From Isurus oxyrinchus (Eukaryota): a stretch of DNA of 64,000 nt. The translations under genes were made by a program, and so were the position numbers. Below, one piece after another: positions 4,201 through 47,814 of this stretch (positions within the stretch are counted from its first letter, which is position 1; each line of letters starts with the position of its first letter). The notes beneath the pieces were generated by a model. The model was given only the letters and a program-made list of their open reading frames with translations. It was not told the DNA's origin and made no database searches. The stretch is from positions 10,602,001-10,666,000 of the forward strand of contig JANJGN010000039.1 of NCBI GenBank assembly GCA_026770705.1, read 5' to 3'.

Positions 4201-4707
4201 AGAGATATGAACATGTATACATGCTATAGAATCATCCATTGCTCCCTGCAAATGCAGTCTGCTTCTGACCTGTTATTGACCTGCTGTTTGGGAAAGGAAA
4301 ATGGAGCAGGTGCAGTGCACTTTGGTTTATGTGCCTCTTGGTTTTGTTACTGTAACCATCCGAGTCTGAAGAACTGCAGAGCGGTGAAGTTTCCTCCACG
4401 GTCCCAAATCCATATCACTTGAACAACAATGATCTATTCGCAATGTAAGTACAAAATAACAATTTCCTATGGCATCTTTTGCATGCAAAACAGAAACTTA
4501 AGGGCTAATTCTTTTCAGTGGATATCTGAATGTTGTGGAGAACGCAATACCGAGTGTGATTCACTGAACTGTGTTTTTGGTTCTGACGCATTGTTGAGGG
4601 TCGGTAGCAGCATTTACACTAGAGAAGTGACACACATCCTCCGGTGCAGGTTCAAAACGCTAATCCCGATTTTGGATCATAAAGAAACATTACATTAAGT
4701 AGACAGC

Positions 4708-6519: not shown

Positions 6520-6990
6520 ATTTAGCTGGGATTGTCCTATGTGGAGACATTGATGACACTGGTCCTCTGCTTTCTGGCGCCCTGGTAAATGAGAAGTGAT
6601 CTCACTGAAGCATTGACCGTTCTTATACGTTTCGGTGGTGTAGATCTTGCATGGATGTTTCCCCTGGCGGGTGTGTCTAAAACCAGGAAAAACAATATCA
6701 GAATAAGAGGACTGAATTTACAAATGAGATGAGGATAATTGCATCACTCAGGGAGGGATAAATGATCGAAATTATGTCCTGCAACCTCGGCAGATGGGCA
6801 GTCACTGAATATATTGAAGGCGCCTATGAACTGATTTCTCAATATTCAATGCATCCGAAGATATGAGATATTGCATGGAATGTCGTGAAGGCATTATTTC
6901 AGCCGGGATATACTTGAGTTGTGGAGCACCCCCCTTGCGGCCAAGTGGCCAACTTCTACTCGGATTTCCTATGCTTCTATGTCTTTCTGC
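6520..6990 (+). mobile_element. Old CR1-type LINE 3' fragment (paralogues at ~46100-46570 and, inverted, ~61150-61640)
   Basis: Degenerate match to the RT C-terminal 'RMRGDLIE..KIL.G.D..D...MFPL' DNA seen in younger copies in this window. Confidence 0.6.
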
Positions 6991-8130
6991 CAGTGCCACC
7001 ATTTAGTGTGACAATATGATTTTCCCAAAGCCAAAGGGGAGTCCGACAATGCTTACTATAAATTCACTCCAATTCTGAATGTAAATTAGTTAGAAGAGGA
7101 AGCAGGTTTTACAACAACAGGAAGTGGAGGGCTAGGAATTGAAATGAGCAGAATAAGGAGAACCAGATAACTACTCGAGAAGCACAGGTGTTCCGAAATC
7201 GGGCCACGTATGTTTCAGTTAGCAATCTGCATGCTGAGATAGATGTTTGACTACTTACGCCCGGCGTCAGTAGTTGAGTACAGAATTCTCGGCTAATGCT
7301 CTATTGCCGTAGTGAAGTAATTCTGCACCATCGGACGTAATAACTTTCAGAACAGATGTCAATTCGATTGAAAGTGTAAACGTGCAAGAACGCTTGCGAT
7401 TATTTCCTCGGACAACATTGTCGTAGCCACTTGCGTCCTGCTAAAGCCTACAAAAAATATCATCTGGTCATTGTCAACTTGCTGCTTGTGGAAGCTTCCG
7501 GACCAAAAATTGCCTGCCACCTTTTGCGTTACTTCGGTGACTGCACTTCATGTAAATTCATTAAGGTGATCGATATTAGAGAGTGTAGAAATGCATGCAT
7601 TTCAATAGACAAGTGACTAAGACATCGGAATGTCTTCAGCACACATAGTAATCTGTTTCACCCAGATTTCCAGATATCCTCTCTGTATACAGATTTGTAA
7701 AAGTATCGCTGTGGTAAGATGTATGTGATTTGACAGGGATTCCGTTCCTTTAAATATTGGAAGATGGATGAAAATAATTAGCAACGGCTTCAAGTATTTC
7801 AAGCAGAATTTTGCAGAATGCGAATTTGCTTCTGCACAGATTTTTCACAGTTTGTGTTTGCTACAAATTCAAACTCGGTTTGCACCTGATAATGATAATT
7901 ATTGCAGAGCCGACCCTGTTATATGACATTCCGTAAAGCAAGAATAAGGTGTCAGCAGTGGAGACCACGGAGAGTAAGAGAGAGCAACAGGAAGACCGTG
8001 TTAACGTTATGGTTAAACATACATCCCTGCTTTGACAACTTTCCATCTGTAAATAAATAATTCCATGTTATCGGAACCGGCGTTTGAGAACATCCATTTA
8101 TTCAGGCAATGATTGTATTTAGGCTCTTAC

Positions 8131-8200
8131 CAGGAACACCAATAGCCGCGAGAATAGGATAGTAAATGGCTTCTATCTGCCGAAGTATCAGTTCTCCCAT
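8131..8200 (-). CDS. GPCR copy 1, exon 1 (MGELILRQIEAIYYPILAAIGVP + 1 nt)
   Basis: ATG at 8200 is conserved in all three copies. The 70-nt exon ends G|GTAAG. Phase 1 joins exon 2 (G+TT=Val), giving 975 nt = 324 aa + stop. Confidence 0.92.
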
Positions 8201-8469
8201 CTTCATGTGGAGATGTCTTTCCTGCAGAGATGGATGCACAACATGGAATGAACGTGTGAGCTGAAAGGTAGAAATCCTCTTCTTCTTTAAATTCATTTCA
8301 GGAAAATAAGAGAAACACGTCAAAATCACAGGCGATTCGGAAGGAGTTGCCACATTAATTAATCTGGAGCACCAGGGTAAAACTGGCGCGACAGCATTCG
8401 TAGCAGGGAACAGAGAAAATCTGTTAACTGTGGATAACATGAAGCCCTTTATTTAAGTAATCATACTCA

Positions 8470-8760
8470 CGGCCGCTACGATCTAGAAAGACAAAGGCAA
8501 AATAATCATGGGAATGCCACATGCTGAAGGTTCCTCTCCCAGCCACTCATCGCCCTGGTTCGCAAAAATATCGCCGTTTCTTCACTGTCTCCGTGTCAAA
8601 TTAAAGGACCACAAACCCCCAACCCCTGCTAATAATAACGTGAATGTAACAACACCACAAAGACCGCAGCAGCTCACCACCCACTTCACAAGGGGAATTA
8701 TAGTTGGGCAATAAATTCTGGCATTGCCAGCGTTGCCCTCATTGATGAATTGAAAGAAGG
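8470..8760 (+). mobile_element. HER1/CR1-type LINE 3' end just upstream of GPCR exon 1 (paralogues ~48075-48380 and ~59400-59690)
   Basis: cagcagctcaccacccactt...gggcaataaattctggcattgccagcg tail; reverse complement of the repeat at 17225-17525. Confidence 0.65.
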
Positions 8761-11700
8761 ACAGAAATTTATATTGTTCATCCGAGGGCATTTTAGTAAA
8801 CGTACATCGGAAAACGAGAGCTTCGAAAATGGGTTTGTAAATGGCCCGTGTCTGATGAAGTACAGCAAATTATATCTTCGGTGAGAAGCGCTAACTCTTG
8901 TTGAAACAGATACACCAGCCTGTTGGAAAAGATGAAATGTGACATTCAGAGGAACTGTTAAGTAGACAGCAGCTAAATCGCGAGGAGAGCATTCATGTCC
9001 CCTAAAGAAATCAATTAGTTTCAGTCATTGAACAAACAGGTTACGTCAGTTGCTCTCCTTCTGAAATGAACCGTTTCGAACTGAAACGGCCAACATTGGA
9101 ATACAATTGAAGGGGCTATATTTTAATGAGCAACGGGTAGATCCCATACTGGATAGTCACGGCGGGAAATGATTGACCCACAGGGCGATGTTGGGAATCA
9201 AATCGTTACTAATTTATATCAAAATGATTCGAGAGAACTCAATCAGCCTGAACCGCCACGAGAAGAAGTGGGGCAATTGTAAATGTTCATCACTGTTTTG
9301 TGATTCCGGACCAAGTCTTTGCTGAAACTGGGCACATGTCTGATGGATGTCTTTCTCATTAAATCTTCCAGAGCGAACTCATACGCTGCCCAGATCTTTC
9401 CGTGGATTCCTTGGGCACTGACATTTCGGTCAGATTCTTGGCCTACATTGTGGGTGGTTGCACAAAAATTTGCACCATTCTGCCTGGAAATTATAAACGT
9501 AACCATAGGACCGGGAAGGCTGGTGTTGGTGGTGACCTGATGAGCAGTAGAAATTGTATGCAGTAGGCTTTTCTTTTCTCAACCAAAATATTTCAAAATA
9601 ATGTGTTGAAGACAATCCGACCCCATACCCCCTCAGTAACGATTCTCCACGCCATGCAATGCTGCTGCTCAACCTCTCACATACTCCATCCAGAGAGATG
9701 GTTGACATGAATGAAAAAACCTTTTTTTGTAATAGAAGAATGGGATATATAGACTACATTGCTCGGAGGCTGTTCCACTCTTAACATTTAACTCTTAACC
9801 ATCAAACGTCTTCTGCAGACAATCATTAGCACATGGATGCACTGATTACAATGAACCCGAATCGACGGCGCCTCCGGCTTTGGTGTGGTCTGCATTTCAA
9901 ACACCCACCAAAACCAGAGTATTTACTGGCAGTTGGTCATTCGGCCCCTTGAGCATGTTCTGCAACTCGGAAAACTCATGGTTTATCTGATCGTGGCCTC
10001 AGCCCCGCTCTCCGCCAATCAGCGTCTTCCGCCGGCCCTTTCCGCCACTTTCCGCACATCACACACTTAAACGCTCATGACCCTACTCTCCCTTATTGGT
10101 CAATAAACTTTTCAACTCAGCCAATATTATGCGACAGAACGGAACAGACGATCAGTGTAATTCTCTCTTTTTGCAAAGTGGGTCGTCAATGTGAACCTAT
10201 TTCATGTCACTTGCGGCGCCAAATAAGGCTGTTTAATACACTTTAATGTGCAACCCAGCTCTGTTTTTCATACATTTGTGAGTCATTCTCCAAGCATGCG
10301 GTCAAAGCGCTTGACACAGGATTACACATATATTTCAGGACCACAGGCAGCGTTTCCAAAGAGCCAAAATTAAATCCTTGCACAGAGGTTACTGGAAAGC
10401 TACAGAGGAATGTCTTATTCGCGGACCAATGCACACTCATAGTTCAGGATCCGGAGACATTCAGCTGCGTGCTGAGCGCTTTGCTGCAAACTCAGAATGT
10501 CTTCGATTGACAATATATCTGAGGATAGAGATGCTGCATCAAATCGTTGCTGGTCACGTGCTCCAAGATACCACAGTCGCTTTGAACAACGCACTCCTCT
10601 GTTCTTTACGGAAGTTTTGCTAACTTGGCAGCATGCAATCCAAGAACACTAACTGGATGGGAAAATTTCCCATCGCCTGACAAAAACAAGCTCGGCATTT
10701 GGCAAGCTTCACTCGCTGACTTCTGCAAATAAAACACGGATTTTCCCGCAGATGGAAGATCAAGGCCTGCCAGGCAGTGTTTCTTTTTATATCACTTTCA
10801 TATCAGCGCGAGACTTGCATAACCTTTCGGCCTCTTAGGAAGTTCATGAAAACTTTACAACTTGACTGCCCGTAAAACATTTCCAACGGTTCTTGGCAAT
10901 GCAAAATCCGCAAAACCGATAATCTTGCAAAGTGCAGCATGACTGACAGCGAAAATATATTCATTACAGCCCCGGTTCCCGGAGTAGGTCATGCGGTTCA
11001 TCTGGAAAATGCCTACGTACCAAACGCCACACTCGGTGAGCACAGGATGTCTGAAATCTGAAGGCCAAACTCAGAGATTGCAAGCTGGATCACAGTACAT
11101 GGATTCCTGATGCGACCTTGCTAAAAACAACGCGGTGTGCCTGCACCATATGAAGCATACTCCCGGAGCACCGGAATTCTCGTACTAAAATGGGGGGTTC
11201 ACAGGCTGGCTTCTGGCGAAAAACCCTGTGGGGATGGAGGATTGGGGAAAGGGGCAAGACTGTGTTGGCCCCCAGTCAAAATCCTGCACAAATGCGGCAG
11301 ATTTGTGGCAGTCAATGGGCACATTTTTCAGGAAAGGGGTGCCTTTCCGTACCTGCCTCTGTCACTTACCATTCCTCGTCCAAAGGGCGGCCAAAGAGAA
11401 AGGTGTAAGGCTGCACTGCAGGTCTCCGTAAAGCAATGAGGCCTTAACAACAGGGCACGGGAGGAGAATGCTGCCAGTCTCTCAGCCTGGCACCAAACTG
11501 TCCATCAAATCGAAAACCACTTCGAGGCTCAAAAGAGTGCTGAAAAGGCCGAGGCACAGGAAGGAAAAGTGAACCGTCCTAGGCCTTTAATTTCCAAAAG
11601 TTAGTGCTAAAAACCAGTCCCACGGCGGAAGAACATATTTGTCCTGAGTTGGAATCCTCAGTCATCTGAAATCACCTTGAGCTTAACACACTTCTTTCTA

Positions 11701-12300
11701 GGTACTGATGGAATGCCCCTGACGTCAATAAGATGAAACAGACAATTTCAGGAAGATAGGACACCTCCACATCTTCAAGGGCAATTTGGGTGGAGCAACA
11801 AGTTGTGGCCCATCTAACCACATCCCTGCCACATGAATGGATACGTCTGAAAACATGATTCTGAACAAAATAACAAACCATCGGCACAACCAAATGGAGG
11901 AATCATCCAGTGATTTCAGCATGTGTGGAGAGCAGAGTCAAGCACATTAAAGACAAGGAAGCGAGTGCAAAGTTAATTTATTCCGCCTGAAAAGACATTT
12001 TATGCAGAATTTGGCAATCGATCGTGCAAGGATAGACCTGATCTAACCTCTCACGTGATAGCACACTGGCACTTTTTTTTTTTGCAGCGCACTCACATGT
12101 CGACGGGCCGGGAGAATTAATCATCAAGCAGACCGACAGACGGATAGTCAGACACATAGATGTACAGATAGACAGACCTTCAAATGGATAGACTGATTTG
12201 AAGAGAGAGTTGAACGCGCGCGAGAGAGAGAGCGAGACAGAATGTGCAACAAATGGACCGACCGAGTGAAAGAGCAAGAGAGTGAGAGAGCGAGATGGAC

Positions 12301-13152
12301 GGATAGATAGATAGATATTTAAATAGATAGATAGATAGACCGANNNNNNNNNNNNNNNNNNNNNNNNNNNNNNNNNNNNNNNNNNNNNNNNNNNNNNNNN
12401 NNNNNNNNNNNNNNNNNNNNNNNNNNNNNNNNNNNNNNNNNNNNNNNNNNNNNNNNNNNNNNNNNNNNNNNNNNNNNNNNNNNNNNNNNNNNNNNNNNNN
12501 NNNNNNNNNNNNNNNNNNNNNNNNNNNNNNNNNNNNNNNNNNNNNNNNNNNNNNNNNNNNNNNNNNNNNNNNNNNNNNNNNNNNNNNNNNNNNNNNNNNN
12601 NNNNNNNNNNNNNNNNNNNNNNNNNNNNNNNNNNNNNNNNNNNNNNNNNNNNNNNNNNNNNNNNNNNNNNNNNNNNNNNNNNNNNNNNNNNNNNNNNNNN
12701 NNNNNNNNNNNNNNNNNNNNNNNNNNNNNNNNNNNNNNNNNNNNNNNNNNNNNNNNNNNNNNNNNNNNNNNNNNNNNNNNNNNNNNNNNNNNNNNNNNNN
12801 NNNNNNNNNNNNNNNNNNNNNNNNNNNNNNNNNNNNNNNNNNNNNNNACATAGAAAGATAGATAGATCGATAGATAGATAGATAGAAAGATAGATAGATG
12901 GATAGACTGATANNNNNNNNNNNNNNNNNNNNNNNNNNNNNNNNNNNNNNNNNNNNNNNNNNNNNNNNNNNNNNNNNNNNNNNNNNNNNNNNNNNNNNNN
13001 NNNNNNNNNNNNNNNNNNNNNNNNNNNNNNNNNNNNNNNNNNNNNNNNNNNNNNNNNNNNNNNNNNNNNNNNNNNNNNNNNNNNNNNNNNNNNNNNNNNN
13101 NNNNNNNAAATAGATAGGTATATATATATAGATAGATAGATAGATAGATAGT

Positions 13153-13210
<58 letters not shown>
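12301..13210. repeat. (GATA)n microsatellite containing two assembly gaps (12344-12847, 12913-13107)
   Basis: Directly visible. Confidence 0.97.
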
Positions 13211-13211
<1 letters not shown>

Positions 13212-13475
13212 AAGCAAAGAACTGCAGATGCTGGGAATCCTAAACAAAAGCAAAAATACGTGGAAGAACTCAGCAGGTCTGACAGCATCTGCACAGAGAA
13301 ACACAATTAACGTTTCGCGTTCGTATGACTCTTCAACGGAACTCAGGAAAAATTGAAAAGAGGCGAAATATAAGCTGGTTTAAAGGAGGTTGTGAGGCAC
13401 AGGTAGAGCTCGATAAAAGGCCAGTGATCACTGTCATACGGACTTGAAACGTTAACTGTCTTCCTTTCCACAGAG
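13211..13475. mobile_element. Penelope-type terminal repeat units (two, in opposite orientation)
   Basis: gcagatgctggga...ctcagcaggtctgacagcatctg...ttaacgtttcg; same family as 21762-21955 and 39726-39866. Confidence 0.65.
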
Positions 13476-13602
13476 CACACGTCCAGATCAATCATTCAAT
13501 ATATTACCACCTTGAGTCGCCGCTCTCCCAATTCAAGCTTTTGAAGTAACCGTAGGATCACGGATCATGCCTCAATTTCTCTCTCTCTCTCTCTCCCTCT
13601 TT

Positions 13603-14490
13603 CACAGAATCACAGAACCAGGAAGCGCAGAAAAGGCACTTCTGCCTATCGAGTCTGCACCGACACGTGAGAAACACCTGACTTTCCACCTAATCCCATT
13701 TGCCACCATTTGGCCCATAGTCAAGAATGTTATGACGTGCCTGGTGCTCATCCAGTTACTTTTTAAAGGATGTGAGGCAACCCGCATACAACATCTTCCC
13801 AGGCAGCATCTTCCAGACCTTCACCACCCTCTGGGTAAAAAGGCTTTCCTCGCATCCCCCCTAAACCTCCTGCCCACCATTTTGAAATTGTGTCCCCTCA
13901 AGACTGACCCTTCTAATAAGGGGAACAGCTGCTCTCTATCCAGCCTGTCCACGCCCCTCATAAACTTGTACACCTCTTTCAGGTCACCCCTCAGTCTTCT
14001 CTGCTCCAACGAAAACAACCCAACTCTATCCAACCTCTCTTCACAACTTAATTGTTTCATCCCAGGCAACATCCTGATGAATATCCTCAGCACCCCCTCC
14101 AGTGCAATCACATCCTTCCTATAATGTGTCGACCAGAACTGCAAACAATACTCCAGCTGTGGCCTCAACAAGGTTCTAAACAACTTCAGCATTACCACCC
14201 TACTTTCGTAATCTCTGCCTCGATTGATAAGTGCAGGTGTCCCATATGTCCTTTTCCCCACCCCACTAACATGCCCTCCATCTTCAGAAATATATGGACA
14301 CAGATGCCAACGTCCATTTTTTCTCAGAACCTCCTAGTGCCATGCCATTCATTGAATACTTCCTCGTCAAATTGCTCCTTCCAAAGTGTATCACCTCACA
14401 TTTTTCAGGGTTAAATACCATCGCCCACTTATCTGCCCATTTGATCATCCCATCTATATCTTCCTGTTGACCAAGACACTAAACCTCACG
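13603..14490 (-). mobile_element. 5'-truncated CR1-type LINE (RT C-terminus and 3' tail)
   Basis: Translation LFRTLLRPQLEYCLQFWS..YRKDVIALE..RLRGDLKEVYKFMRG; tail repeat (CACAGAAT) at 13603. Confidence 0.9.
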
Positions 14491-14959
14491 ATTAACCAAC
14501 AAGCTAACGATAAATGGTTAAGATGCACAACAACTTGGTGAAAGGAGTAATGTTCAAGCAGTGCCTTGAAGGAGGGGAGCGAGTTAGAGAGGCAATGGAG
14601 GTAAATACCGGAGCTTGAGGCATAGGTAACTAACTAAAGATACTGTCATGACAGTTGGGGCAATTCTGCTCGGGAAGGCACAAAAGACCAGATTGTGACC
14701 AGCGCTGATAACTTGGAGAATCATGGGGCTGTGGGTAATTGCAAGCAAGAATGAGAATTGAAAAGTCAATATGGTCCTCGATGATTAGCAATTTCGTAAT
14801 AGTGATTACAGCAAGGACAATTGAACTTAAATGCATTGAGACCCAACAATTTTCACGCACTATTAAATATTCCAATCAAGTCAGAACAGCATGTTGCATT
14901 GGAAGTTTCTATATGTGACTCAATCAGTCAGTTGAGGGTCTCTGCCTCTGCTACCCTTT

Positions 14960-15617
14960 TGTACAGCGAGTTCCTGACTCCAGGTACCCGCGGTTTTTCT
15001 TCAAATCCAAAGCGGGGTTTCCCCACATGGTTTGAATCCTACCGACTATTCCAATCTGTTGTCACTTTGACAACCCGACCACAGGGGCCTCAGGTACAGG
15101 TCACGAACGTTTATTCCAGCAATTGCAAGGGGAGAGTCATCTCAGTACAGCTTGAGATCACACTCTGCTAAATTACAAGCGTTCAACATATTTATACATT
15201 ATTGGTCACGTACAAGAAGAGTTTCCAGATTCCCATCTCGTCACTATATCCGTTTACATTAAACAGGCATCTCTGGTAACAGGTACATTCATCGCATGTC
15301 CCTATTTTTACCCAGGCAGAGACCTTCCGTCCTACCTAAACTAGGACCATCCGTCCTTCCCCTATCTGTTGAAGAGCACAATTACTCTATGTCTTAGCCA
15401 TCCTCTGACTCCAGTGTGGCTCCTGAGGCCTTTCCGTTGGTAACAGGCCCTAAGCCTGAGCAAAGTTCATCTGGTAATCTTTAAGTGTTAATATACATGA
15501 TAGCACTGGCTGCCTGGAGATTTAAAGTAATTAATTCCTTTTCAATAAATTTTCCCTTACCATAAATTCTTACTTAATTTCTTCCCCAACACACTCTCTG
15601 CTCTAAAATTCCTAACA
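14960..15617 (-). mobile_element. Possible solo LTR
   Basis: Minus strand starts TGTTAGG, has AATAAA near 15110, and interrupts LINE-derived sequence; no partner LTR seen. Confidence 0.25.
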
Positions 15618-15639
15618 ACCCCGTTAAACCCAATTCCCC

Positions 15640-15915
15640 TAGTCACTGGTTGAAGTAAATAGGTCCGTCACATCCATTCGATCCAGGCTGCTCACAATTC
15701 TGTATATTTCAATGTAATCTCCCCTCAGCCTCCTCTCTTGCAAGAAGAACGACTCCAGCCTATCCAGTCTTTCTTCATTGTTGCAATTGTCAAGGTCTGG
15801 AAATATCCTCGTTATATTTCCTCTGTACCATGTCTAATGGAATTGCATCTTTTCTGTAAAGAGGTTACCAGAAATGCACACAATACTCAAAGTCACAACT
15901 AATGAACGTTTCATA
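15640..15915 (-). mobile_element. Degenerate CR1-type LINE RT fragment
   Basis: Similar to 13960-14170 (cccctcagcctcctct...accagaaatgcacacaatactc). Confidence 0.7.
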
Positions 15916-17224
15916 GCCCTAGTACCTTGAAGACACGCTCGCTGATATAAATTTAATTTTTTAAATATAAATTAGTTACAACCCAGTCGACATCTCCAAA
16001 TGTATTTGATGTTGTCAGCTGGGGACATTGTGTCTGATTATCCGTTTTACTTACTGTTCGTTTTGCATGGACTGCAGAGAGTAAGCAGTCAACTTGATTC
16101 GCCACAAACTGTTATTTGACTCATTTCCATTATGTTCACTGGACTGGCAGAATTCCCTTTGTCCCCTTCCATTCCCCTTGCATATCATCCAACGGACTCC
16201 ACATGCCCGCAAAACAGGACGCGTGCTCCTGATAATTGGCCGCATCAATTCAGGTCTGAGCACTCTCTTGGACTAAGGTTCACCAAGGAGCATTGCCTAT
16301 TAGTGGATGCATTTGAATCGCCTCCTCACACACTTAGGCACTCCGCCATTTTCTGCATGCCATGATGCCCCTTCAGGAATTCACCACAAAATCAGCCCAG
16401 GCACAGCTATCTTCGACTCTACATTGCTCCTTGCAAACTGCCTGTTCTCCCAACCCGTGAGAAATGGACTGTTGCTTTATCAAACTCATTCAGACACCTC
16501 CAGTGGAGGTTTGAAAGCAGTGGGGATGATCGTTTCCTTCCAGTATTCTAAGTTCTATTCCGATTTAAAAAGTACATCTGGGACCTGGTTCTCGCCCGAC
16601 GGGTCTCTGACCTTCCCTTCTCATGGTCTCTGCACAGATTGTTAACCTTTACGCCTTGGTAATGCTCGATAATGTTGGAGTTCATCAAGGGCTCTATTAT
16701 CGCTTACTTCCATGTGGCTGCTTACACAACAGGTTCTGTGGTGCTCTGTTACAAAAGACATTGAAATTGTTGTCCTGTCCTAGCAGTGAAATGAAATTTC
16801 ATTAAAATTTCACTGAAATTAATTTGTCCCAACTCCAACAGAACAATTGACCGTGACTCTACAGCATGTCATTTCACTGTCCCAAACCATTCTGTCCCTT
16901 TTGTGTGTGTGTGTGTGTGCAAGTTGTTGTCAAAAACATCTAATTAAAACTTGGCTTTTTCTGAACAGTTCCAGAAGCATCTGCTATTGTCTATGCTTTC
17001 ACAATCTAAGGCAGACATTCTGATTGAGCTCCAGTTTTGGTTCATTTCTAAATAACGTGGCTTCTTGCCTTCACTTGCTTTATCAGGAATATCCTAGGAT
17101 CAAGACTGATAATTTGCATCACGGAATTAAGAGAAGACGAAGTACTTTGTGTTGTCTAGGGACTGTGTGTTATTTAAAAAAAAACAGTAAAACCAGCCCA
17201 GAACATTTGCCGTCAATATTGTTT

Positions 17225-17525
17225 TTTCATTCATTCAGGGTATGTGGGCTTCGCTGTCACGGCACAGCATTTATTGCCCATCTCTAGTTGCCCTTGAGAA
17301 GGTGGTGGTGAGCTGCCTTCTTGAGCCGTTGCAGTCCCGGTGGTGTGGGTAGACCCACAGTGCTGTTAGGAGGGAGTTCCAGGTTTTTGACCCAATGATA
17401 GTGAAGGAACGGCCGATATATTTCCCAGTCAGGATGGTGAGTGACTTGGAGGGGAACTTCCAGGTGGCGGTGTTCCCATCTATCTGCTGCCCTTGTCCTT
17501 CTAGATGGTAGTTCTCGTGGGTTTA
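17225..17525 (-). mobile_element. HER1/CR1-type LINE 3' end
   Basis: cattcattca...gcatttattgcccatctctagttgcccttgagaaggtggtggtgagctgcc; recurs near 28150, 35370 and 59440. Confidence 0.8.
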
Positions 17526-17817
17526 GCCTTTATCATGTGGGCGTTAAGACCGCCAGGTCAGGCAGCCAAGAGGAAAATCGTGGAAGAAATTTTAAACGCT
17601 GGCCGTTTAAAATCCCCTGCTACTGATTTTATTAAGTTGTTCGGAAAAAATGTCCAATGGATTCTGTTAGGGTGCACGATTTTACAGTGGCTAAGGGGCG
17701 TTTAGCACACAATCAGCTGGGAAGAATTTCCAAAGCTATTGATGTATTTCATTACATTAGCACGCACATGGTTGTGTATTTAATCTTACACATGTTCAAC
17801 GTTTTATTGCTCCTCAG

Positions 17818-17919
17818 GGCCAGGGACCACTTTCCCTCTAATTGCTGTCCTGGGGTGTGCAGCCGAAATAATCCTGGCAACGTTTGTGGCAATGATGGCG
17901 TGCTTGTTCGCCAGAAGAA
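17818..17919 (+). CDS. ITIM receptor: transmembrane exon (xPGTTFPLIAVLGCAAEIILATFVAMMACLFARR)
   Basis: ctcctcag| acceptor, |GTAAGT donor; 102 nt, phase 1-1; hydrophobic helix followed by RR. Confidence 0.8.
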
Positions 17920-18484
17920 GTAAGTGTTCGTCAAGAAAAAAAAAATAACTACCATTTTTCATGAAAAAAGGAGGAAAAGTTGGCGGGAACCTGCAAACAA
18001 CCCTAAACTCAACTGCAGCATTAAAATTGTCAGCAGCTATGGATGAATACATGTTGAGGAATGAGGCCTTGTCTTAATTGAAAGGTCACTTTGATGCAGA
18101 GGATGTGAGTAAAGCAACTGGAACATCACCCTCATTACTGGCGGACAACAGTGACCCTCTCGATCGCACGCCCCTTCCCTTTCGTCTCACCCCATCGAAT
18201 GTCACCACTCCCTGTGTACTTACGGTTTGCTCTCACCTGCCCTCTCTGGCTTTGTCTTCAGAAACGGCCACCGCTTCAACTCCTGGCAAACCGGCGTAGA
18301 GTGTAATTTGCGACAGGGGTCATAAACCACACGCCCAGGCTTGTGGCACGGCCTCAGATTCCACCACGGCAGCTGCTGGAGTTTGAGGTAAACCAATTAA
18401 TAATTTTAGAATTTTAAGTCAGTGTCAGTACTGCTATCCAGGAATCTACAATCGATTACAATTTATATATATATATATTTTAAA

Positions 18485-18690
18485 ATGGTCCAGTAATGCT
18501 CTTTAGGGAAGCAACTCGGCCATCGTTGCCTGATCTCGCCTACATGTGACTCCTGCACACAGCAATATTGCTAACGCTTAAATGTCCTCTGAAATCGCTT
18601 AGACATTCGGTTCAAGAACAATGAGGCATGAGCAACAAACTCAGGCATTGCCAGGGAAAACGACATACCATGGGAGGATGAGTTGAAAGG
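18485..18690 (+). mobile_element. Degenerate HE1-type SINE 3' part
   Basis: ctttagggaag...cctacatgtgactcc...ctctgaaat...ttcaag body, recalled from shark SINEs; inverted relative at ~23120-23450. Confidence 0.55.
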
Positions 18691-18964
18691 AGAAATTTGA
18701 CAAGAAGCCTCAGTATATTTTGACCTCAACATTCAAATGGACATACAAACTTACATCTGACATCTTCCTTTGGCCGAATATTGCATTGAGCTTCTCATTC
18801 GGAAGTGTTGTATTGACAGCAGCTTTTTCAAATTCTCTGCAGGGATATTAAGCTGAACAAGCAGTACTCCGGTCTCTCAGCTCGAAACCAAAAGTCAAAA
18901 ATTTAGGCCAAGCTCGTAACATTTTTTCTTGTACCAGAATAGGATATCGATATCAGATTTGAAA

Positions 18965-19525
18965 GGCCAACTCTCCACTACTGCCTTCTACCGCCCCCTG
19001 GATCATGGCACCCCTTCATAAAATGAAGCCACCCGATCTAGGGCCGTCACTGACCTGATCTCCTGTGCAGATCTCCCCTCCATGCCTTCCAATCACATGG
19101 CCCAACCTCCCTAAATAGTCAGCATCTACCTCCACCCCAATCTGAAAAGGCGACGTATCTGGTTTCATCCTATTGTTTCAAACTACTCCTAACCAACTGT
19201 GCTTAATTATTCCTATCTCGATTCTATTTATTTCTTATACATCACTCCCTACCTACATCCATTGCTCTGCTGATGCCCTCCGTCTCTTCAACAGTTTCTG
19301 GCTCTGCTTCCGTTTCGCCATGGACGTCCAATCACTCTGTAGGTCAATTCGCCACCAGGGCGACCTGTGAGCCCTCCCCATTCTTTCTCCTTGTATGGAG
19401 GACCAACAAATCGCCGTGTCGTTAAACAACATTTGCTTCCACTCCACTTAACTCCTTCAAATTAAACATGTTGCTCTGGGCACTGAGTGGGACCTAGCAA
19501 CAGCTTCACTTCGCTGTTTTGTAGA
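18965..19525 (+). mobile_element. Decayed Penelope-like element reverse transcriptase
   Basis: Translation FAMDVQSL..SI.HQ (cf. PLE RT MDV.SLYTSIPH) and downstream VALGT/GPS..SLF remnants; stops and frameshifts. Confidence 0.7.
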
Positions 19526-19559
19526 GGAGGCGATAGCATAGTTGCATTGTTAGTGGACT

Positions 19560-20108
19560 TAGTAATCTTTGGTCCCCTTTATTCAAGAATGAATACACTG
19601 GCATTGGAGGCAGTTCAAAAGAGATTCAATGGGCTGATTCCTGGGATGGAAGTGTTGACTCATCGAGAACGGCTAAAGAGTTTAAGCCTTTATTCATTCG
19701 AGTTTAGAAGAATGAGGGGTGATCTTATTGAGACCTGCAAGATTTTGAGGGGGCTTGACAGTGTCAATGTTGAGAAGATGTTTCCACTCGTGGAAGAATC
19801 TCAAACTAGGAGACATAGTTACAGCATAAGGGGCCACTCAATTAAAACTGAGCTGCATGTGGATTTCCTCTCTCAGAGGGTAGTGAATGTGTGGAAATCT
19901 CTAGCCTAGTGAGTTGTGGAGTCTAAACCGTTGAAAGTATTTAATGATGATGTAGATAGATTTTTGAAATATTGGGGAGTTGAGGGCTATGAGGAGCTGG
20001 CACGAAAGAGGAGTTGAGGCCTGGGGCTAATCATCCATAATATTATTTAATGGCTCGGGTGGCTAGAGGGGCCGAATGGCCTACCTCTGCTCCTTTTTTG
20101 TGTTCTGT
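19560..20108 (+). mobile_element. CR1-type LINE 3' fragment
   Basis: ALEAVQKRF..LIPGM..RRMRGDLIETCKILRGLD..KMFPL; typical ggccgaatggcctacctctgctcc 3' UTR. Confidence 0.9.
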
Positions 20109-20719
20109 CCTACACCCTAATACAAATCATCCCTTTTGTTCCTCTTCACGGCCTTCTGTGATTTCACCTGCGGAGAGAGAAACAGAGATAACATTTCGAG
20201 TCGAATATGACTCATCTTGCACACTGATCCTGCTGTTTCCCCTTCCCTACTGCAGATAGCTCTTTGTTCCATTCGCCAATATACAGATGTCAAACTGTTC
20301 CCCCTATTCATCCGGTCGTTTCACGTTGGTGTGCCACGTTCCATTTTCAACAATCTGAAGACTGAAACATTCCTAGTCGCACAGCCACATATCACAGCTG
20401 TGCCCACTACAGAATCCACTCCATGTCATTCGCCTTCATCACTGATGGTGGTGCTTCAGCGAAAGTTTTCAGAACTTAACTAGCTAACTGGAAGCTTCCG
20501 AAAAGTTAAAGCCATCTACAAAATGCATCACTTCGAGAACGCTTTTGATCCATTCCTTCTGTAAAACAATTCAGGAGCACTTCCATCACCCAAAGAAAGG
20601 CGAGAACTCGAAGTCTTCTCTTTATTTCTCTCTGTTTTTTATACTTTTCTTGTCAAAACTGGTAACACCATTAATAAAGGCGGACCTGATGTGTTCAAGA
20701 GCGAAGGGGTAATAGAGAG

Positions 20720-20889
20720 AGTGATAAGTGGGAAGACTAGAAAGAGGCAATTAGGTCACGTGAGGTGTCAAGAACTGGATTATAAACACCAACACTAAAT
20801 TACGTGTTTCAAAGCTATTTATGTGTGTAGCCCAAGTGCTCTGGAGCACACGGGATATTTTACTGCCTTCAGGCACTGAATTTGTAAGT
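20720..20889 (+). promoter_or_regulatory. Candidate intronic promoter / alternative first exon of the ITIM gene
   Basis: TGATAA (20722), GTCACGTGA E-box (20755), TATAAA (20781), then consensus donor GTAAGT at 20884. Confidence 0.35.
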
Positions 20890-21113
20890 GGAAGCTATTG
20901 ATACTGAGACGCAAGTAGAGGAAACTGGGTTGGAGGATATTATCGGTTAATTTCATGGTTTCCTACACCATAGCATGTTTATTAGTCATATATCCTCATT
21001 ATATTAGGAGCAAATTCATAAAACCTTTCAATGCATTAAATCCATAGAATATTGAGCATTTGGAAAACTTTATCAAGTGCCTTACATTTTTCCCACTTTT
21101 TGCTTTATTGCAG

Positions 21114-21141
21114 GAAAGAGAAAAAGACTAAATATTGAGAG
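21114..21141 (+). CDS. ITIM receptor: juxtamembrane micro-exon (RKRKRLNIE)
   Basis: tttattgcag| ... AG|GTAATG; 28 nt; only the phase-1 frame is open and it matches the TM exon. Confidence 0.8.
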
Positions 21142-21311
21142 GTAATGACATTGCTTTAGTTCTCCAGTATTTATAGTTGTGAGCAAAATGTACCACACGA
21201 TATTACTCAATTCAGTAAAAGTTAAATATTTTCTTAAACTTGTGCATTGGAAAATAAACATGATTTTGGGGGGAATACTTCTAACAAATCAAACTTTCTT
21301 TCATTTTAAAG

Positions 21312-21364
21312 GTGCGCAGCGTCTGCAAGTGGAATGGCAAATCAGCAAGATGGTGATCTCCTGT
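21312..21364 (+). CDS. ITIM receptor: cytoplasmic exon (RCAASASGMANQQDGDLL)
   Basis: ttttaaag| ... |GTAAGT; 53 nt, phase 2-1. Confidence 0.78.
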
Positions 21365-21761
21365 GTAAGTATAGTAATGTTGACATTGACTGTATTTCTT
21401 GATCAAGGATCATTGCTCTTTCTGACACTGTCCGTCACGGTTGTCTGAATGGCTTATGTAGTTATTTCCAATATTCTCCCTTCTATATTTAAATAGAATT
21501 TATTTGGTAGACCTAGTATAGAATTAGAAACATTTCTAAAGATTGTTGATCACTTGGTTGCAAGAAACATGGGTCTTTGGGGATCAAATTTTTCATGGGT
21601 CATCAAACAAACTGCATCCATTTTACAGTGTTATACTACACACCCAGTATTCTGTTCTATTAAAGTCGTGGTTACAGGAAAACTGGATGATATGGGAATC
21701 GAATTATTCGTGGGCTGGCACATCAAACATACGGGATCTATTTAAAAGTGGAAAAGACTCT

Positions 21762-21955
21762 GCAGGTCTGACAGCATCTGTGGAGAGAAAGGGACAGTTA
21801 ACGTTTGGAGTCAGTATGTCTCTTCTTCAGAGCTCTGGAAAGAGCCACACGCATTCGAAAGGTTCGCTTTTTCTTTCTCTCCATGGATACTGTCAGACCT
21901 GCTCAGTGTTTGTCAAGCATTTTCTATTCTTGTTTCAGATTACCAGTATCCGCAA
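21762..21955. mobile_element. Inverted pair of Penelope-type terminal units forming a ~140-bp imperfect palindrome
   Basis: gcaggtctgacag (21762) ... ctgtcagacctgc (21902), centre GAGCTC 21830-21835. Confidence 0.75.
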
Positions 21956-22141
21956 AGCAGGAGTGTTTGGCTGCCTGCAAGTCATGTGTTTGAAATGGAA
22001 TTGAAATTCACGTCGTTCCTATAAACAACAACACATCTGTAACACCGCTTAACGTCAATAGACAAGGAACTTGCTAGACCATTTACCCTCCATGAAAGCA
22101 TGCAACAATTGAATCAAAATGCACTTGTCTTTCCTTTTCAG

Positions 22142-22179
22142 TTCTTAACCAGAGTGGTTCCTCCAACCTGGAGATGAAC
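22142..22179 (+). CDS. ITIM receptor: cytoplasmic micro-exon (FLNQSGSSNLEMN)
   Basis: ttccttttcag| ... |GTAAGC; 38 nt, phase 1-0, exactly restoring frame into the ITIM exon. Confidence 0.8.
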
Positions 22180-22244
22180 GTAAGCACCTATTTTGAATAT
22201 TGCTATTATTCTCAGCCAACTCACGGAAAAATGGACGCAAACAT

Positions 22245-22560
22245 ATGATATTCTGAGTGGGAGGTATGATATTCTGAGTGGGAGGTAGAGAGTGAGGTAT
22301 AGGGGGCAAAAAGTGAACAGGGAACCCTGGAATTGCAGATCAAGGAAGAGAGAATGAATATTGAGAGAGAGGAAAAGGGTGGGAGAGCGAGCAAGAGCGG
22401 GAAAAAAGATGAAAAGCCTGAAATTTGGAAACACAAGGAAAGACAGGAGGCGCGAGAGTGACTTAGAGAGTGACATAGGGAGGGACAAAAGAACAGGGGG
22501 CAGTCTGAGGAAGGGTGAGTGAAATTCAAAAGGAACATTCGATAGAAGAAATGAAACAAT
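22245..22560. repeat. Purine-rich (GA) low-complexity intron tract with a 21-bp tandem duplication at its start
   Basis: tatgatattctgagtgggagg x2, then GA-rich sequence. Confidence 0.75.
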
Positions 22561-23119
22561 AAAGCAGTGCATGATCGCACCATTGTTGAAGCGAACCGCC
22601 AAGGAGGAGGCCGTTCTGCCCATCGTCCAAGGGCTATCAGCCTCACTTACTCCTCCATGCTAGAACCGTGCCCATATCACTGTAAATTCCTCATTCAAAA
22701 TATTTTTTGAAACATTGCACGGGGTTGCCTCGAATCACGTTATCAGATGGTATGCTCCAGATTCTAACAACTCCCTGAATGAAAAATAAGGTAACAACAA
22801 TCTATGCTCTTCTGCCCTCCAGTTTTATTTAATTCTCCAAATAATGTCCACTCCCTGCTGTTGTAGGATGGTCCAGTAGTTAGCGGGAATATTGGCTTCC
22901 CTCTATCGACTATGTTGAAAATGTCATCGCCGTGGAAACATATCTCAGTTAAACTCATAGTTCGAAGCGATGACTGATTTGTTTTAGTTTATTCTATCTC
23001 CAAGGAAGCCCCACGTCCACTTAATTTACCAATGAACGGACTTATGTTTTACCCTTTTTCTGAGATCATTATCTCATTCCTGAAGTCTGGTGTTTAGGTT
23101 TCAGAAATAAGTTTTTCAT

Positions 23120-23450
23120 GGGTTGTGGGTGCCATTATCAAGGCCTCCCGAAATCACCCTTAAAATGAGCGGCTTGCTTGGCCATTTCAGAGGGCAGGTA
23201 AGGGCCAATCACTTTGCTTTTAGGTCTGGACTTACAGGTGGGCCAGACCAGGTGAGGGCGTCAGATTTCCTTCCCTCGAGGACATGCGTGAACCAGATGG
23301 GCTGCTAGAACAAACAATGGTAGCTTCATGAGGCCATATTCCAATTCCACATTTATTAAGTGAACTTGGATGAGCCTGATCAGTTAATTCAGTAAGTGTT
23401 AATCAAGGCTTCTGAATTACCTTTCCAAGCAATTGGTCACTAGGCCACTG
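23120..23450 (-). mobile_element. Degenerate HE1-type SINE
   Basis: gccatttcagagggcag...ggccagaccaggtgagg..cagatttccttccct; reverse complement of the SINE body at ~18485. Confidence 0.6.
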
Positions 23451-23701
23451 CTTCCCCTGAATTGCCCACAGTGCTCTAACCAATGATATTATAAATCTGC
23501 AAAATGTCATCTTCGTTGTAATATTCCTCCCGTCTTGTCCTTTTGACTCAATCCAAATTATATGTTCTTCAAATCAATTTATTAGACTGCTCTGTTTCAT
23601 GGAAAGACATATAGCTTCCAGGAATTTAAATTTAGCCTGCGCCTGTTGCGATCACCTTGTTCCCTTTGCTTTTATTATTTCCTGTGTGTTATTCATCGCA
23701 G

Positions 23702-23827
23702 GGATTCTATTCAGAAGTGCTAGAGGACGACAATGGGGAGATAAACTATGCATCGTTGAACCTGGAAGCCCTCAGTTGGAAAGATGGGGCCTCCACCTGT
23801 GAACCAGGCGCCAACTTCCCAGCTAAA
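23702..23827 (+). CDS. ITIM receptor: exon with YSEV and ITIM INYASL
   Basis: catcgcag|GGA ... AAA|GTAGG; 126 nt, phase 0-0; GFYSEVLEDDNGEINYASLNLEALSWKDGASTCEPGANFPAK. Confidence 0.88.
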
Positions 23828-23994
23828 GTAGGGAAAAAAATTACATTTCTGTTCGGTGGGTGCTTGATTTGTGTGATGAAAAAGTGGGCGTAAAGAGGCA
23901 GAAGGAAAACTAAAAGGGGGAAATGTCAAAAAGTTTGTAGCTGGGGGTAAAGGAAACTAGAGCAGGACCCTAGGAAATACAAAGAAAATAAAAA

Positions 23995-24325
23995 CGTTGC
24001 AGAGACAGAGAAAAAACGCAGAGGACATGGGGACGCAGAGAGAGAGAGAGACAGAGACAGAGCGTGGGAGAGGGAAAAGGTGAGTAAGAGAGACAGCGAG
24101 AGAACATGGAGGTGGGGTGTCGAGGATGTGAGAGTGAGAGAGGGAGGGAATCAATGAGAGAGACAGAGACAGAACATGAGGCTTGGGGAGCGAGAGCGAG
24201 AGATAGCATGGGAGAGGGAGAAAGTGAGTGAGAGAGACGGGGAGAGAACATCGGGGTGACGTTGAATGGATTGCCAGAGGAAGGGAAGAGAGCATGAGGT
24301 TGATAAAAGGCGAATCGAGAGAAAG
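23995..24325. repeat. GA-rich low-complexity intron tract
   Basis: Directly visible; explains the S/L-rich minus-strand ORFs. Confidence 0.85.
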
Positions 24326-24367
24326 GTGATCTTACCCACTTGTGCCATTGTGTTTCTTTCCTTGCAG

Positions 24368-24451
24368 AAGAAGCGTTCTGAATTAGCAAAGAGCGAGTTT
24401 CAAGATGTCACCTACGCACCTGTGAGAGTTGACTCGGATAAACCGCAATGA
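24368..24451 (+). CDS. ITIM receptor: terminal exon with ITIM VTYAPV
   Basis: tttctttccttgcag|AAG; KKRSELAKSEFQDVTYAPVRVDSDKPQ*; phase 0. Confidence 0.88.
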   Translation, partial: KKRSELAKSEFQDVTYAPVRVDSDKPQ

Positions 24452-24658: not shown

Positions 24659-24664
24659 AATAAA
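24659..24664 (+). terminator. Candidate polyadenylation signal of the ITIM receptor gene
   Basis: AATAAA ~210 nt after the stop, followed by T/GT-rich sequence; a second AATAAA at 24843. Confidence 0.55.
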
Positions 24665-25068
24665 CTTTGAATGAACTTTTTCTATATTTTGTGGCAATAA
24701 TCCAGATTGAAATTATTCAAAAAGTTACAATTTCAGTGTCGCTTTGATACAAATATCCAAGTTGGAACCATAAGCATAATTATTTCGTGGGCAATTTTCC
24801 GTCTGATAGGCTCAGCAGAATAGTTAGCAATTAGGTTCTTACAATAAATGCTCATTTAGTAGCACAGGACTGGAGTACTGCTGCTAAAATAGACCCACTG
24901 TCACAGCTTTTCGCCTTACGCTCATCAGGATAGCTCGTGACAAATTACCAACAGGAAAGGAGGAGTGATAATGAATACTCCAACTCTCACAGCAGTGACA
25001 CATCTAACGCCAGGCCGCCTCGTTTTGAACACACAGCGGAATTATTCCCTGTGTGTCATTCATCGCAG

Positions 25069-25170
25069 AGACTCTATTCTGAAGTGCTAGCGAATGACAA
25101 TGAGGAGATAGACCATATATCGTTGAACCTGGAAGCCCTCAGTCGGAAAGAAGAGGCCTCCACTGTTTAA
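25069..25170 (+). other. Duplicated ITIM exon (pseudo-exon or alternative last exon), ITIM Tyr>His
   Basis: Clear paralogue of 23702-23800 including the acceptor; RLYSEVLANDNEEIDHISLNLEALSRKEEASTV*. Confidence 0.75.
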
Positions 25171-47744: not shown

Positions 47745-47814
47745 CAGGAACACCAATAGCCGCGAGAATAGGATAGGAAATGGTTTTTATCTGCCGAAGT
47801 ATCTGTTCTCCCAT
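47745..47814 (-). pseudogene. GPCR copy 2, exon 1 (MGEQILRQIKTISYPILAAIGVP)
   Basis: 70 nt, ATG at 47814, donor G|GTAAAA; paralogue of 8131-8200. Confidence 0.9.

What the first reader, a model, noticed from the sequence alone, without database searches (positions are those of the whole stretch)
17818..24451. Hidden six-exon ITIM-bearing membrane receptor inside a GPCR cluster
Seen: six GT-AG exons (17818-17919, 21114-21141, 21312-21364, 22142-22179, 23702-23827, 24368-24451) join in phase (1-1, 1-2, 2-1, 1-0, 0-0, 0-stop) with no internal stop. They give xPGTTFPLIAVLGCAAEIILATFVAMMACLFA-RRRKRKR-LNIERCAASASGMANQQDGDLLFLNQSGSSNLEMNGFYSEVLEDDNGEINYASLNLEALSWKDGASTCEPGANFPAKKKRSELAKSEFQDVTYAPVRVDSDKPQ*. 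Knowledge: INYASL and VTYAPV fit the ITIM consensus (I/V/L/S)xYxx(L/V) that recruits SHP-1/SHP-2. EINYASLNL resembles the CD33 motif ELHYASLNF, and YSEV occurs in the CD33 and PECAM1 tails. A phase-1 TM exon plus several small tail exons is typical of Ig-superfamily receptors. Inference: an inhibitory immune receptor or transmembrane adaptor of a cartilaginous fish that ORF-based annotation would miss.
Basis: partly seen in the sequence, partly recalled or inferred. Interest (0 to 1): 0.85.

Follow-up and report, generated by a model that had tools for sequence, protein, structure and literature searches.

The report
Shark ITIM receptor tail without ectodomain
The six small exons are real and encode the membrane anchor and inhibitory-type tail of a shark two-Ig immune receptor family, but this copy has no visible outer part, so it may be a headless leftover, not a working receptor.

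Summary
All six exons have AG/GT borders, the stated phases and no internal stop.

Independent support comes from one public protein, P0003 (371 aa), which NCBI names 'immunoglobulin superfamily member 1-like [Cetorhinus maximus]'. Taken one at a time, the exon peptides map to its residues 231-371 in order and without gaps. Exactly one residue is missing at each split codon. Identity is 107/138. YSEV and both ITIM-type tyrosines are conserved.

P0003 has a leader and two C2-type Ig domains (Pfam Ig_3 and Ig_2). Its weak best PDB matches are LILRB4 and FCRL4.

The window holds only the transmembrane exon and the tail:
- No leader or Ig exon is detectable on either strand.
- The tail lies between two tandem minus-strand GPCR genes.
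- An orphan copy of exon 5, with the ITIM tyrosine lost, sits 620 nt past the stop.
- No RNA run holds the locus, and no contig covered exons 1-4.
- No protein with this exact tail is in the collections searched.

My reading is a 5'-truncated family copy (0.45). The rivals are a complete gene with far-upstream exons (0.3) and an expressed Ig-less adaptor (0.12). This is a new member of a known kind, of modest interest. The scan's own first-reader notes on this window had already flagged the missing ectodomain.

The parts
17818..17919 (+). Exon 1 of the visible part. It starts in phase 1 and encodes a short stalk (PGTT), a transmembrane helix with an internal Glu, and the start of the basic stop-transfer run.
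   Evidence: Searches show the borders and frame. One search gives a Kyte-Doolittle 19-residue maximum of 2.36. Searches align it to P0003 231-262 (25/32 identical). P0003 has Ala where the window has Glu.
21114..21141 (+). Exon 2, 28 nt. It encodes the rest of the basic stop-transfer run (KRKRLNIE).
   Evidence: Searches show the borders and frame. One search aligns it to P0003 264-271 (7/8 identical).
21312..21364 (+). Exon 3, 53 nt, a cytoplasmic segment.
   Evidence: Searches show the borders and frame. One search aligns it to P0003 273-289 (15/17 identical). One search gives tblastn E 1.4e-5.
22142..22179 (+). Exon 4, 38 nt, a cytoplasmic segment.
   Evidence: Searches show the borders and frame. 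One search aligns it to P0003 291-302 (10/12 identical).
23702..23827 (+). Exon 5, 126 nt. It holds GFYSEV, which is not a strict ITIM, and the ITIM-type INYASL.
   Evidence: Searches show the borders and frame. (phmmer) gives E 1.7e-7 to P0003 303-343. One search gives 29/42 identical.
24368..24451 (+). Exon 6, 84 nt. It holds the ITIM-type VTYAPV and the TGA stop.
   Evidence: Searches show the borders and frame. One search aligns it to P0003 345-371 (21/27 identical), ending on the same last residue.
24659..24664 (+). AATAAA poly(A) signal candidate, about 210 nt after the stop.
   Evidence: Read. Its use is not shown.
25041..25167 (+). Orphan copy of exon 5, including 28 nt of its upstream intron and the acceptor. 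It keeps YSEV, has His in place of the ITIM tyrosine, and ends in TAA.
   Evidence: One search gives 87% identity over 123 nt. One search shows the alignment. One search gives 23/31 identical to P0003 304-334.

Best explanation
The six exons are a genuine, structurally unbroken transmembrane-plus-cytoplasmic module. It belongs to a shark receptor family whose full-length member is P0003. P0003 has a leader, two C2-type Ig domains, a transmembrane helix and a roughly 109-aa tail carrying YSEV and two ITIM-type tyrosines.

In this window the module stands alone. I read it as most likely a 5'-truncated copy, left by a partial duplication or deletion between two tandem GPCR genes. It is still intact in sequence but probably makes no receptor.

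The mechanism the module is built for is inferred from established ITIM biology and is not shown here. After ligand engagement of the ectodomain, Src-family kinases phosphorylate the INYASL and VTYAPV tyrosines, which lie 42 residues apart. These then dock the SH2 domains of SHP-1/SHP-2 (or SHIP) and damp activating signals. YSEV would be a third SH2 docking site.
For: The module is real.
- Borders, phases and open frames are as described.
- It maps gaplessly and in order to P0003 231-371, with one residue missing exactly at each of the three split codons and none at the two phase-0 joints. Identity is 107/138. tblastn E-values reach 5.5e-12.

Family evidence.
- P0003 is named by NCBI 'immunoglobulin superfamily member 1-like [Cetorhinus maximus]'.
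- Pfam finds Ig_3 at 27-99 and Ig_2 at 130-204.

Evidence for truncation.
- P0003 residues 1-228 have no credible match anywhere in the window on either strand (E limit 10). A repeat on the plus strand upstream with E limit 200 gave best E-values of 4.9, 14 and 0.78, all short chance-like strings.
- No stop-free segment of 60 aa or more on either strand has an Ig-type Cys...Y/F-x-Cys pattern in a believable context. Five pattern hits were found and none was Ig-like.
- The open frame around exon 1 has no ATG before the helix (segment 17784-17945).
- The tail's own introns are short (170-3194 nt). A complete gene would need an intron longer than 17.8 kb that also contains a whole two-exon antisense GPCR gene at 358 to about 8200.
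- The orphan exon-5 copy shows that partial duplication happened at this locus.
- No product of the locus is in the collections. Only P0003 was found among 458 and 3663 candidates, and nothing among proteins of 47-149 aa.
- No RNA holder was listed.
- Exons 1-4 had zero depth in 4 of 4 runs laid.
Against: - All six exons, all eleven splice sites, the stop and a poly(A) signal are intact, and all three tyrosine motifs are kept. An old relic would be expected to show breaks.
- The window ends 17.8 kb upstream of the transmembrane exon. Shark introns can be long, so distant Ig exons cannot be excluded.
- Two N runs (12344-12847 and 12913-13107) were not and may not be read.
- The runs laid were small (48-116 million letters) and only guessed to be RNA, so their silence means little.
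- A product longer than 649 aa, or one of 150-203 aa, would have escaped.
Confidence: 0.45

Rival explanations
1. This is a complete, working inhibitory receptor gene. Its leader and Ig exons lie more than 17.8 kb upstream, outside the window. GPCR gene A is nested antisense in that long intron. The product would be an unannotated paralogue or orthologue of P0003.
For: - All exons, splice sites and motifs are perfectly intact.
- The phase-1 acceptor at 17818 is what an Ig exon would splice to.
- An earlier first-reader note (s1-900693, unchecked) places another ITIM Ig-superfamily gene 101 kb upstream on the same piece, so a receptor cluster is nearby.
Against: - The tail's own introns are 170-3194 nt.
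- The model needs a very long intron that holds a two-exon GPCR gene.
- No product was found in the collections.
- No expression was seen.
Confidence: 0.3
2. This is an expressed Ig-less ('headless') product. A local leader exon splices to the transmembrane exon and gives a small membrane protein with almost no ectodomain and an ITIM tail, that is, a transmembrane adaptor.
For: - A scan of 8450-17700 for ATG exons with a hydrophobic core and a phase-1 donor gave 3 candidates.
- The best is 17505-17556 (donor CAG|GTCAGG), 261 nt upstream of the transmembrane exon.
- The window-specific Glu in the helix, where P0003 has Ala, would suit pairing with a partner that has a basic residue.
- Earlier notes of this scan report headless receptor copies elsewhere in this genome (s1-866044, s1-870005).
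Against: - The candidate leader overlaps the end of a repeat at 17225-17532 that has six or more other matches in the window.
- One such candidate near the exon is expected by chance about one time in ten.
- There is no RNA evidence.
- The follow-up of s1-866044 judged its own headless copy a deletion leftover.
Confidence: 0.12
3. The Ig exons are hidden by an assembly problem. They would lie in the N runs, or the tail has been misplaced into the GPCR cluster.
For: Two N runs of 504 and 195 nt lie 4.7-5.5 kb upstream of the transmembrane exon.
Against: - The N runs are flanked by a simple-sequence repeat (translations around 11978-13306).
- Together they could hold at most two Ig exons with almost no intron.
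- I did not and may not look into them.
Confidence: 0.05
4. This is a chance chain of open frames and GT-AG sites with no gene behind it.
Against: The exons map gaplessly and colinearly to a natural protein, and the split codons fall exactly where single residues are missing.
Confidence: 0.01

Closest known systems
P0003, NCBI 'immunoglobulin superfamily member 1-like [Cetorhinus maximus]' (371 aa; automatic name)
   Same: The transmembrane helix and the whole tail are colinear, with 107/138 identical residues, the same C-terminal residue, and conserved YSEV, IxYASL and VTYAP motifs.
   Different: - P0003 has a leader and two Ig domains. The window has none.
- P0003 has Ala where the window's helix has Glu.
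- P0003's last motif ends in Met (VTYAPM), while the window's ends in the canonical Val.
LILR / LRC-type and FCRL-type C2-Ig inhibitory receptors (e.g. LILRB4, FCRL4/5)
   Same: - The design is the same: C2-type Ig domains, a single transmembrane helix, and a tail with two ITIM-type tyrosines.
- P0003's best PDB sequence matches are LILRB4 (E 0.016) and FCRL4 (E 0.019).
- The protein-atlas look-alikes are IGSF1, TARM1, allergin-1, LILRA2/B3 and FCRL5 clusters, scoring 0.96-0.97 (leads only).
- The LPKPTLSV start of domain 1 after a 23-24 aa leader recalls LILR. This is recalled knowledge, not tested.
   Different: - The sequence similarity is below significance.
- The tail has no detectable relative outside P0003 (1 true hit of 6).
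- The ITIM tyrosines are 42 residues apart. From memory, the spacing in KIR, LILRB and LAIR-1 is about 23-31.
- Synteny with the LRC or FCR loci was not tested.
CD33-related Siglecs (CD33, Siglec-5)
   Same: INYASLNL compares with ELHYASLNFH, and YSEV with STEYSEVRTQ (PMC9570199 Table 1). Siglec-5 has LHYASL and TEYSEI (PMC2722167, passages read).
   Different: - The motif order is reversed, and there is a third motif (VTYAPV).
- P0003's ectodomain shows no V-set lectin domain above threshold.
- The likeness is at motif level only and may be convergent.
PECAM-1 / CEACAM1-type tails encoded by many small exons
   Same: A phase-1 transmembrane exon is followed by several very short cytoplasmic exons that carry the tyrosine motifs. 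This gene-structure knowledge is recalled.
   Different: No sequence relationship was found, and this was not tested beyond the searches above.

Membership tests
P0003 family (shark two-Ig ITIM receptor, NCBI 'IGSF1-like') | Colinear homology of the transmembrane helix and tail | tested here: met
   One search gives six gapless exon-by-exon alignments covering P0003 231-371, 107/138 identical. One search gives E-values down to 5.5e-12.
P0003 family (shark two-Ig ITIM receptor, NCBI 'IGSF1-like') | Leader plus two Ig domains encoded upstream of the transmembrane exon | tested here: not met
   Searches find no match to P0003 1-228 and no Ig-like exon anywhere in the 64 kb window. The N runs and the DNA outside the window were not examined.
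ITIM-bearing inhibitory receptors (functional class) | At least one cytoplasmic (I/V/L/S)xYxx(L/V/I) motif after a transmembrane helix | tested here: met
   One search shows INYASL and VTYAPV. One search shows the hydrophobic helix, followed by an Arg/Lys run. The consensus is as quoted in PMC2722167.
ITIM-bearing inhibitory receptors (functional class) | Phosphotyrosine-dependent recruitment of SHP-1/SHP-2/SHIP | not testable with these tools
   This needs biochemistry.
ITIM-bearing inhibitory receptors (functional class) | The gene is expressed as a spliced mRNA | tested here: inconclusive
   In one search, 0 of 5 listed runs hold the stretch. In one search, 4 of those 5 runs were laid, no joint fell at any exon, and depth was zero over exons 1-4. 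The runs are small and only guessed to be RNA.
LRC (LILR/KIR-like) or FCRL receptors | Significant sequence or fold similarity of the Ig domains to LILR/FCRL domains | tested here: inconclusive
   This could be tested on the homologue P0003 only. Best matches are LILRB4 (E 0.016) and FCRL4 (E 0.019). The AlphaFold single-sequence model was too poor to search with (pLDDT 46.6).
LRC (LILR/KIR-like) or FCRL receptors | Genomic linkage to the LRC or FCR region | not tested
   In the window only GPCR genes flank the locus.
CD33-related Siglecs | N-terminal V-set domain with the sialic-acid-binding arginine | tested here: not met
   The domain is absent from the window. P0003 shows Ig_3 and Ig_2. 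Its only V-set-type hit is far below cut-off (V-set_CD47, 14.1 bits against 21).
CD33-related Siglecs | Membrane-proximal ITIM followed by a distal ITIM-like/ITSM motif | tested here: not met
   Here YSEV lies 13 residues before the ITIM tyrosine. In CD33 the ITIM (Y340) precedes YSEV (Y358).
Transmembrane adaptors (short ectodomain, e.g. SIT1/LAX-type) | Own start codon and leader directly before the transmembrane helix | tested here: inconclusive
   The frame of exon 1 has no ATG upstream. One speculative leader candidate lies at 17505-17556, with no support.

The most novel reading that the evidence does not exclude
The copy is not dead. It would be expressed as an Ig-less membrane protein from a local leader exon such as 17505-17556. 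Its window-specific transmembrane glutamate would pair with receptors that carry a basic transmembrane residue. That would make it an ITIM-bearing inhibitory counterpart of the DAP12/FcR-gamma type of signalling adaptor.
Probability: 0.05. Interest if true: 0.8.

Novelty: new member of a known kind. Interest (0 to 1): 0.3.

Why it matters
The exon model is correct. It adds a second, previously unrecorded tail copy to a shark two-Ig receptor family with ITIM-type motifs that so far rests on one automatically named protein.

The one paper I could find on the question (Akula et al. 2014, PMC4016189, passages read) states that no FcRL or C2-only LRC homologues exist in sharks. A family whose nearest, though weak, relatives are LILR and FCRL therefore bears on when such receptors arose. 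That point rests on P0003 and not on this window.

The locus itself is probably a fragment, so its value lies mainly in annotation and in showing how these families turn over.

Tried and rejected
- Spurious phmmer hits. Five of the six hits to exon 5 (P0001, P0002, P0004-P0006; 318-1368 aa) are long repeat proteins matched through 3-7 short stretches. Reading them, I rejected them as repeat or composition artefacts.
- Structure. The AlphaFold2 single-sequence model of P0003 was poor (mean pLDDT 46.6, pTM 0.30). I ran no fold search on it.
- False lead for domain 1. The weak tblastn hit 'PKPSLSA' at 45919-45993, and its look-alike at 6250-6459, belong to a repeat with three copies in the window. 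It is not an Ig exon.
- Pfam scan. Of ten stretches scanned (nine plus-strand or repeat ORFs upstream and the GPCR), only the GPCR gave a real family (7tm_1).
- Short proteins. A search for proteins of 47-149 aa sharing exon 5 found nothing.
- Papers. Searches found no paper describing this family in cartilaginous fish. I saw only listings and abstract starts, apart from the passages of PMC4016189, PMC2722167 and PMC9570199 named above. Most subscription journals are not in that library. I did not ask for supplements, and they could hold shark receptor lists.
- Earlier findings. The search of earlier findings gave only titles for the neighbouring notes.
- One open detail. Run X1 shows depth 0.91 in the bin 23590-23789. 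The contig's exact place was not listed, so I cannot say whether it touches exon 5.
- The joined step. The exons were never joined, and no joined peptide was translated, searched, folded or typed. The three split codons were read by eye. Two of the three agree with P0003.

Full report
**1. The observation**

I read the five stretches that hold the six exons and translated each exon alone in its stated phase.

The separate peptides are:
- exon 1: PGTTFPLIAVLGCAAEIILATFVAMMACLFARR
- exon 2: KRKRLNIE
- exon 3: CAASASGMANQQDGDLL
- exon 4: LNQSGSSNLEMN
- exon 5: GFYSEVLEDDNGEINYASLNLEALSWKDGASTCEPGANFPAK
- exon 6: KKRSELAKSEFQDVTYAPVRVDSDKPQ, then the stop

No joined peptide was translated, searched or folded.

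I scored the splice sites with a rough matrix whose frequencies I recalled. The acceptors fall in the 95.2-99.7th percentile of the window's 4043 AG dinucleotides. The donors fall in the 91.1-98.4th percentile of its 3451 GT dinucleotides. Exon 1 has a 19-residue hydropathy maximum of 2.36 and is followed by an Arg/Lys run. AATAAA lies at 24659-24664.

**2. Independent confirmation**

I ran phmmer with exon 5 alone (42 aa) against 1.84 billion representative proteins. Six proteins had E of 0.001 or less. After reading the sequences, I rejected five of them as long repeat proteins.

The sixth is P0003 (371 aa). It matches exon 5 at residues 303-343 with 71% identity. NCBI names it 'immunoglobulin superfamily member 1-like [Cetorhinus maximus]'.

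A local tblastn of P0003 against the window hits exons 1, 3, 4, 5 and 6 in order. Aligning each exon peptide alone places them as follows.

| Exon | P0003 residues |
|---|---|
| 1 | 231-262 |
| 2 | 264-271 |
| 3 | 273-289 |
| 4 | 291-302 |
| 5 | 303-344 |
| 6 | 345-371 |

There are no gaps. Exactly one residue is missing at each of the three split codons, none is missing at the two phase-0 joints, and the last residue is the same. Identity is 107 of 138. That pattern is very unlikely unless the splice model is right. YSEV, IxYASL and VTYAP are all conserved. P0003's last motif ends in Met and the window's ends in Val. The Glu in the window's helix is Ala in P0003.

**3. What family**

P0003 carries Pfam Ig_3 (residues 27-99, E 9.9e-7) and Ig_2 (130-204, E 8.4e-8). 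Twelve PDB sequences matched at E of 1 or less, all weakly. The best are LILRB4 (0.016), FCRL4 (0.019) and contactin-2 (0.027).

The protein-atlas feature search lists IGSF1, TARM1-like, allergin-1, LILRA2/B3 and FCRL5 clusters at 0.96-0.97. These are leads only.

Word-indexed searches with P0003's tail (458 candidates) and with the whole protein (3663 candidates) returned only P0003 itself. The family is therefore sparsely recorded, and the tail has no detectable relative elsewhere.

A single-sequence AlphaFold model was too poor to use.

My conclusion is a two-Ig, C2-type receptor of LILR/FCRL-like design. Formal membership in the LRC or FCRL families is undecided.

**4. What is missing here**

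- P0003 residues 1-228 (leader and both Ig domains) have no credible match in the window on either strand.
- No stop-free segment of 60 aa or more on either strand looks like an Ig exon.
- Nine upstream ORFs gave no Pfam family.
- The open frame that contains exon 1 has no ATG before the helix.
- Two N runs (12344-12847 and 12913-13107) were left alone.

So the window holds a transmembrane-plus-tail module only.

**5. Context**

The flanking GPCRs are two-exon genes on the minus strand.
- Copy A has exon 2 at 358-1263 and exon 1 ending at a GTAAGA donor near 8131. Pfam gives 7tm_1 with E 1.6e-20.
- Copy B has exon 2 at 37909-38849, 75-80% identical to A, and is split into two frames.

The tail lies in the roughly 30 kb between them, among repeats.

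A copy of exon 5 with its acceptor lies at 25041-25167, 620 nt after the stop. It is 87% identical over 123 nt. It keeps YSEV, has His for the ITIM tyrosine, and stops early. By eye, exon 5 and this orphan copy differ mostly at non-synonymous sites. Each has about as many private amino-acid changes relative to P0003. So exon 5 does not look clearly more constrained than the orphan, though the numbers are small.

**6. Expression**

No listed run holds the stretch (0 of 5). I laid four of the five runs on 17790-23789. Contigs lay only on intronic repeats. Depth was zero in every bin that holds exons 1-4. No joint touched an exon. One X1 contig of depth 0.91 lies somewhere in 23590-23789.

The runs are small and only guessed to be RNA, so this is weak negative evidence. 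Exon 6 and the 5-6 junction were outside the 6000 letters allowed.

**7. Reading**

The module is real (about 0.99). Three readings differ on whether it is part of a working gene.

A complete gene needs an intron longer than 17.8 kb that holds an entire antisense GPCR gene, whereas the tail's own introns are 170-3194 nt. The locus also shows partial duplication, and no product or transcript was found. Against a relic, all six exons, eleven splice sites, the stop and the three motifs are intact.

I put a truncated copy at 0.45, a complete gene with distant exons at 0.30, an expressed headless adaptor at 0.12, an assembly problem at 0.05, and the rest on other possibilities.

A speculative leader (17505-17556, phase-1 donor) exists, but it overlaps the end of a repeat and is unsupported.

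The mechanism is inference from established ITIM biology: Src-kinase phosphorylation of the two ITIM-type tyrosines, then SHP-1/SHP-2 docking.

**8. Known and new**

The CD33 likeness is true at motif level, but the motif order is reversed and the homologue has no lectin V-set domain.

Akula et al. 2014 (PMC4016189, passages read) reported no FcRL or C2-only LRC homologues in sharks. P0003 and this tail are at least candidates against that statement. Six searches found no paper on the family.

First-reader notes on this same window had already flagged the missing ectodomain, the acidic helix residue and the duplicated exon. I checked all three.

Noticed in passing
window 358-8200 (-): There is an intact two-exon rhodopsin-type GPCR gene here. 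Exon 1 ends at a GTAAGA donor near 8131 inside TM1. Exon 2 runs 358-1263 after a pyrimidine-rich acceptor. Pfam gives 7tm_1 with E 1.6e-20. The 314-aa 'ORF' in the list starts at a GTG only because the true start lies in exon 1.
   Followed up: partly
window 37909-38849 (-) and 47662-47967 (-): A second GPCR copy is 75-80% identical to the first. Its exon 2 is split into two frames near residue 109-114, from a frameshift or an assembly error. An exon-1-like ORF lies about 9 kb upstream of it.
   Followed up: partly
window 25041-25167 (+): This is an orphan duplicate of exon 5 with its acceptor. The ITIM tyrosine is replaced by His and there is an early TAA followed by ATTAAA. It could be an alternative last exon or a dead copy.
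   Followed up: partly
window 17505-17556 (+): An ATG-initiated hydrophobic mini-ORF with a phase-1 donor (CAG|GTCAGG) lies 261 nt upstream of the transmembrane exon. It overlaps the end of a repeat. It is a speculative leader for a headless product.
   Followed up: partly
window 17225-17532, with six other matches in the window (e.g. 59411-59681, 35381-35642, 8476-8742): This is a short interspersed repeat, 66-74% identical between copies. It lies just upstream of the transmembrane exon.
   Followed up: no
window 13821-14261 (-) and 19487-19909 (+): Two ORFs resemble each other and look like the C-terminal part of a retroelement protein. That judgement is from memory, and Pfam found nothing for the first. 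The second lies in intron 1 of the tail. Public contigs cover 19590-20389, 21590-21989 and 22990-23389 at high depth, as expected of repeats.
   Followed up: no
window 11978-13306: Two N runs (12344-12847 and 12913-13107) are embedded in a simple-sequence repeat.
   Followed up: no
window 5235-5523 (+): This is a G-rich low-complexity stretch that reads as poly-Gly in two frames.
   Followed up: no
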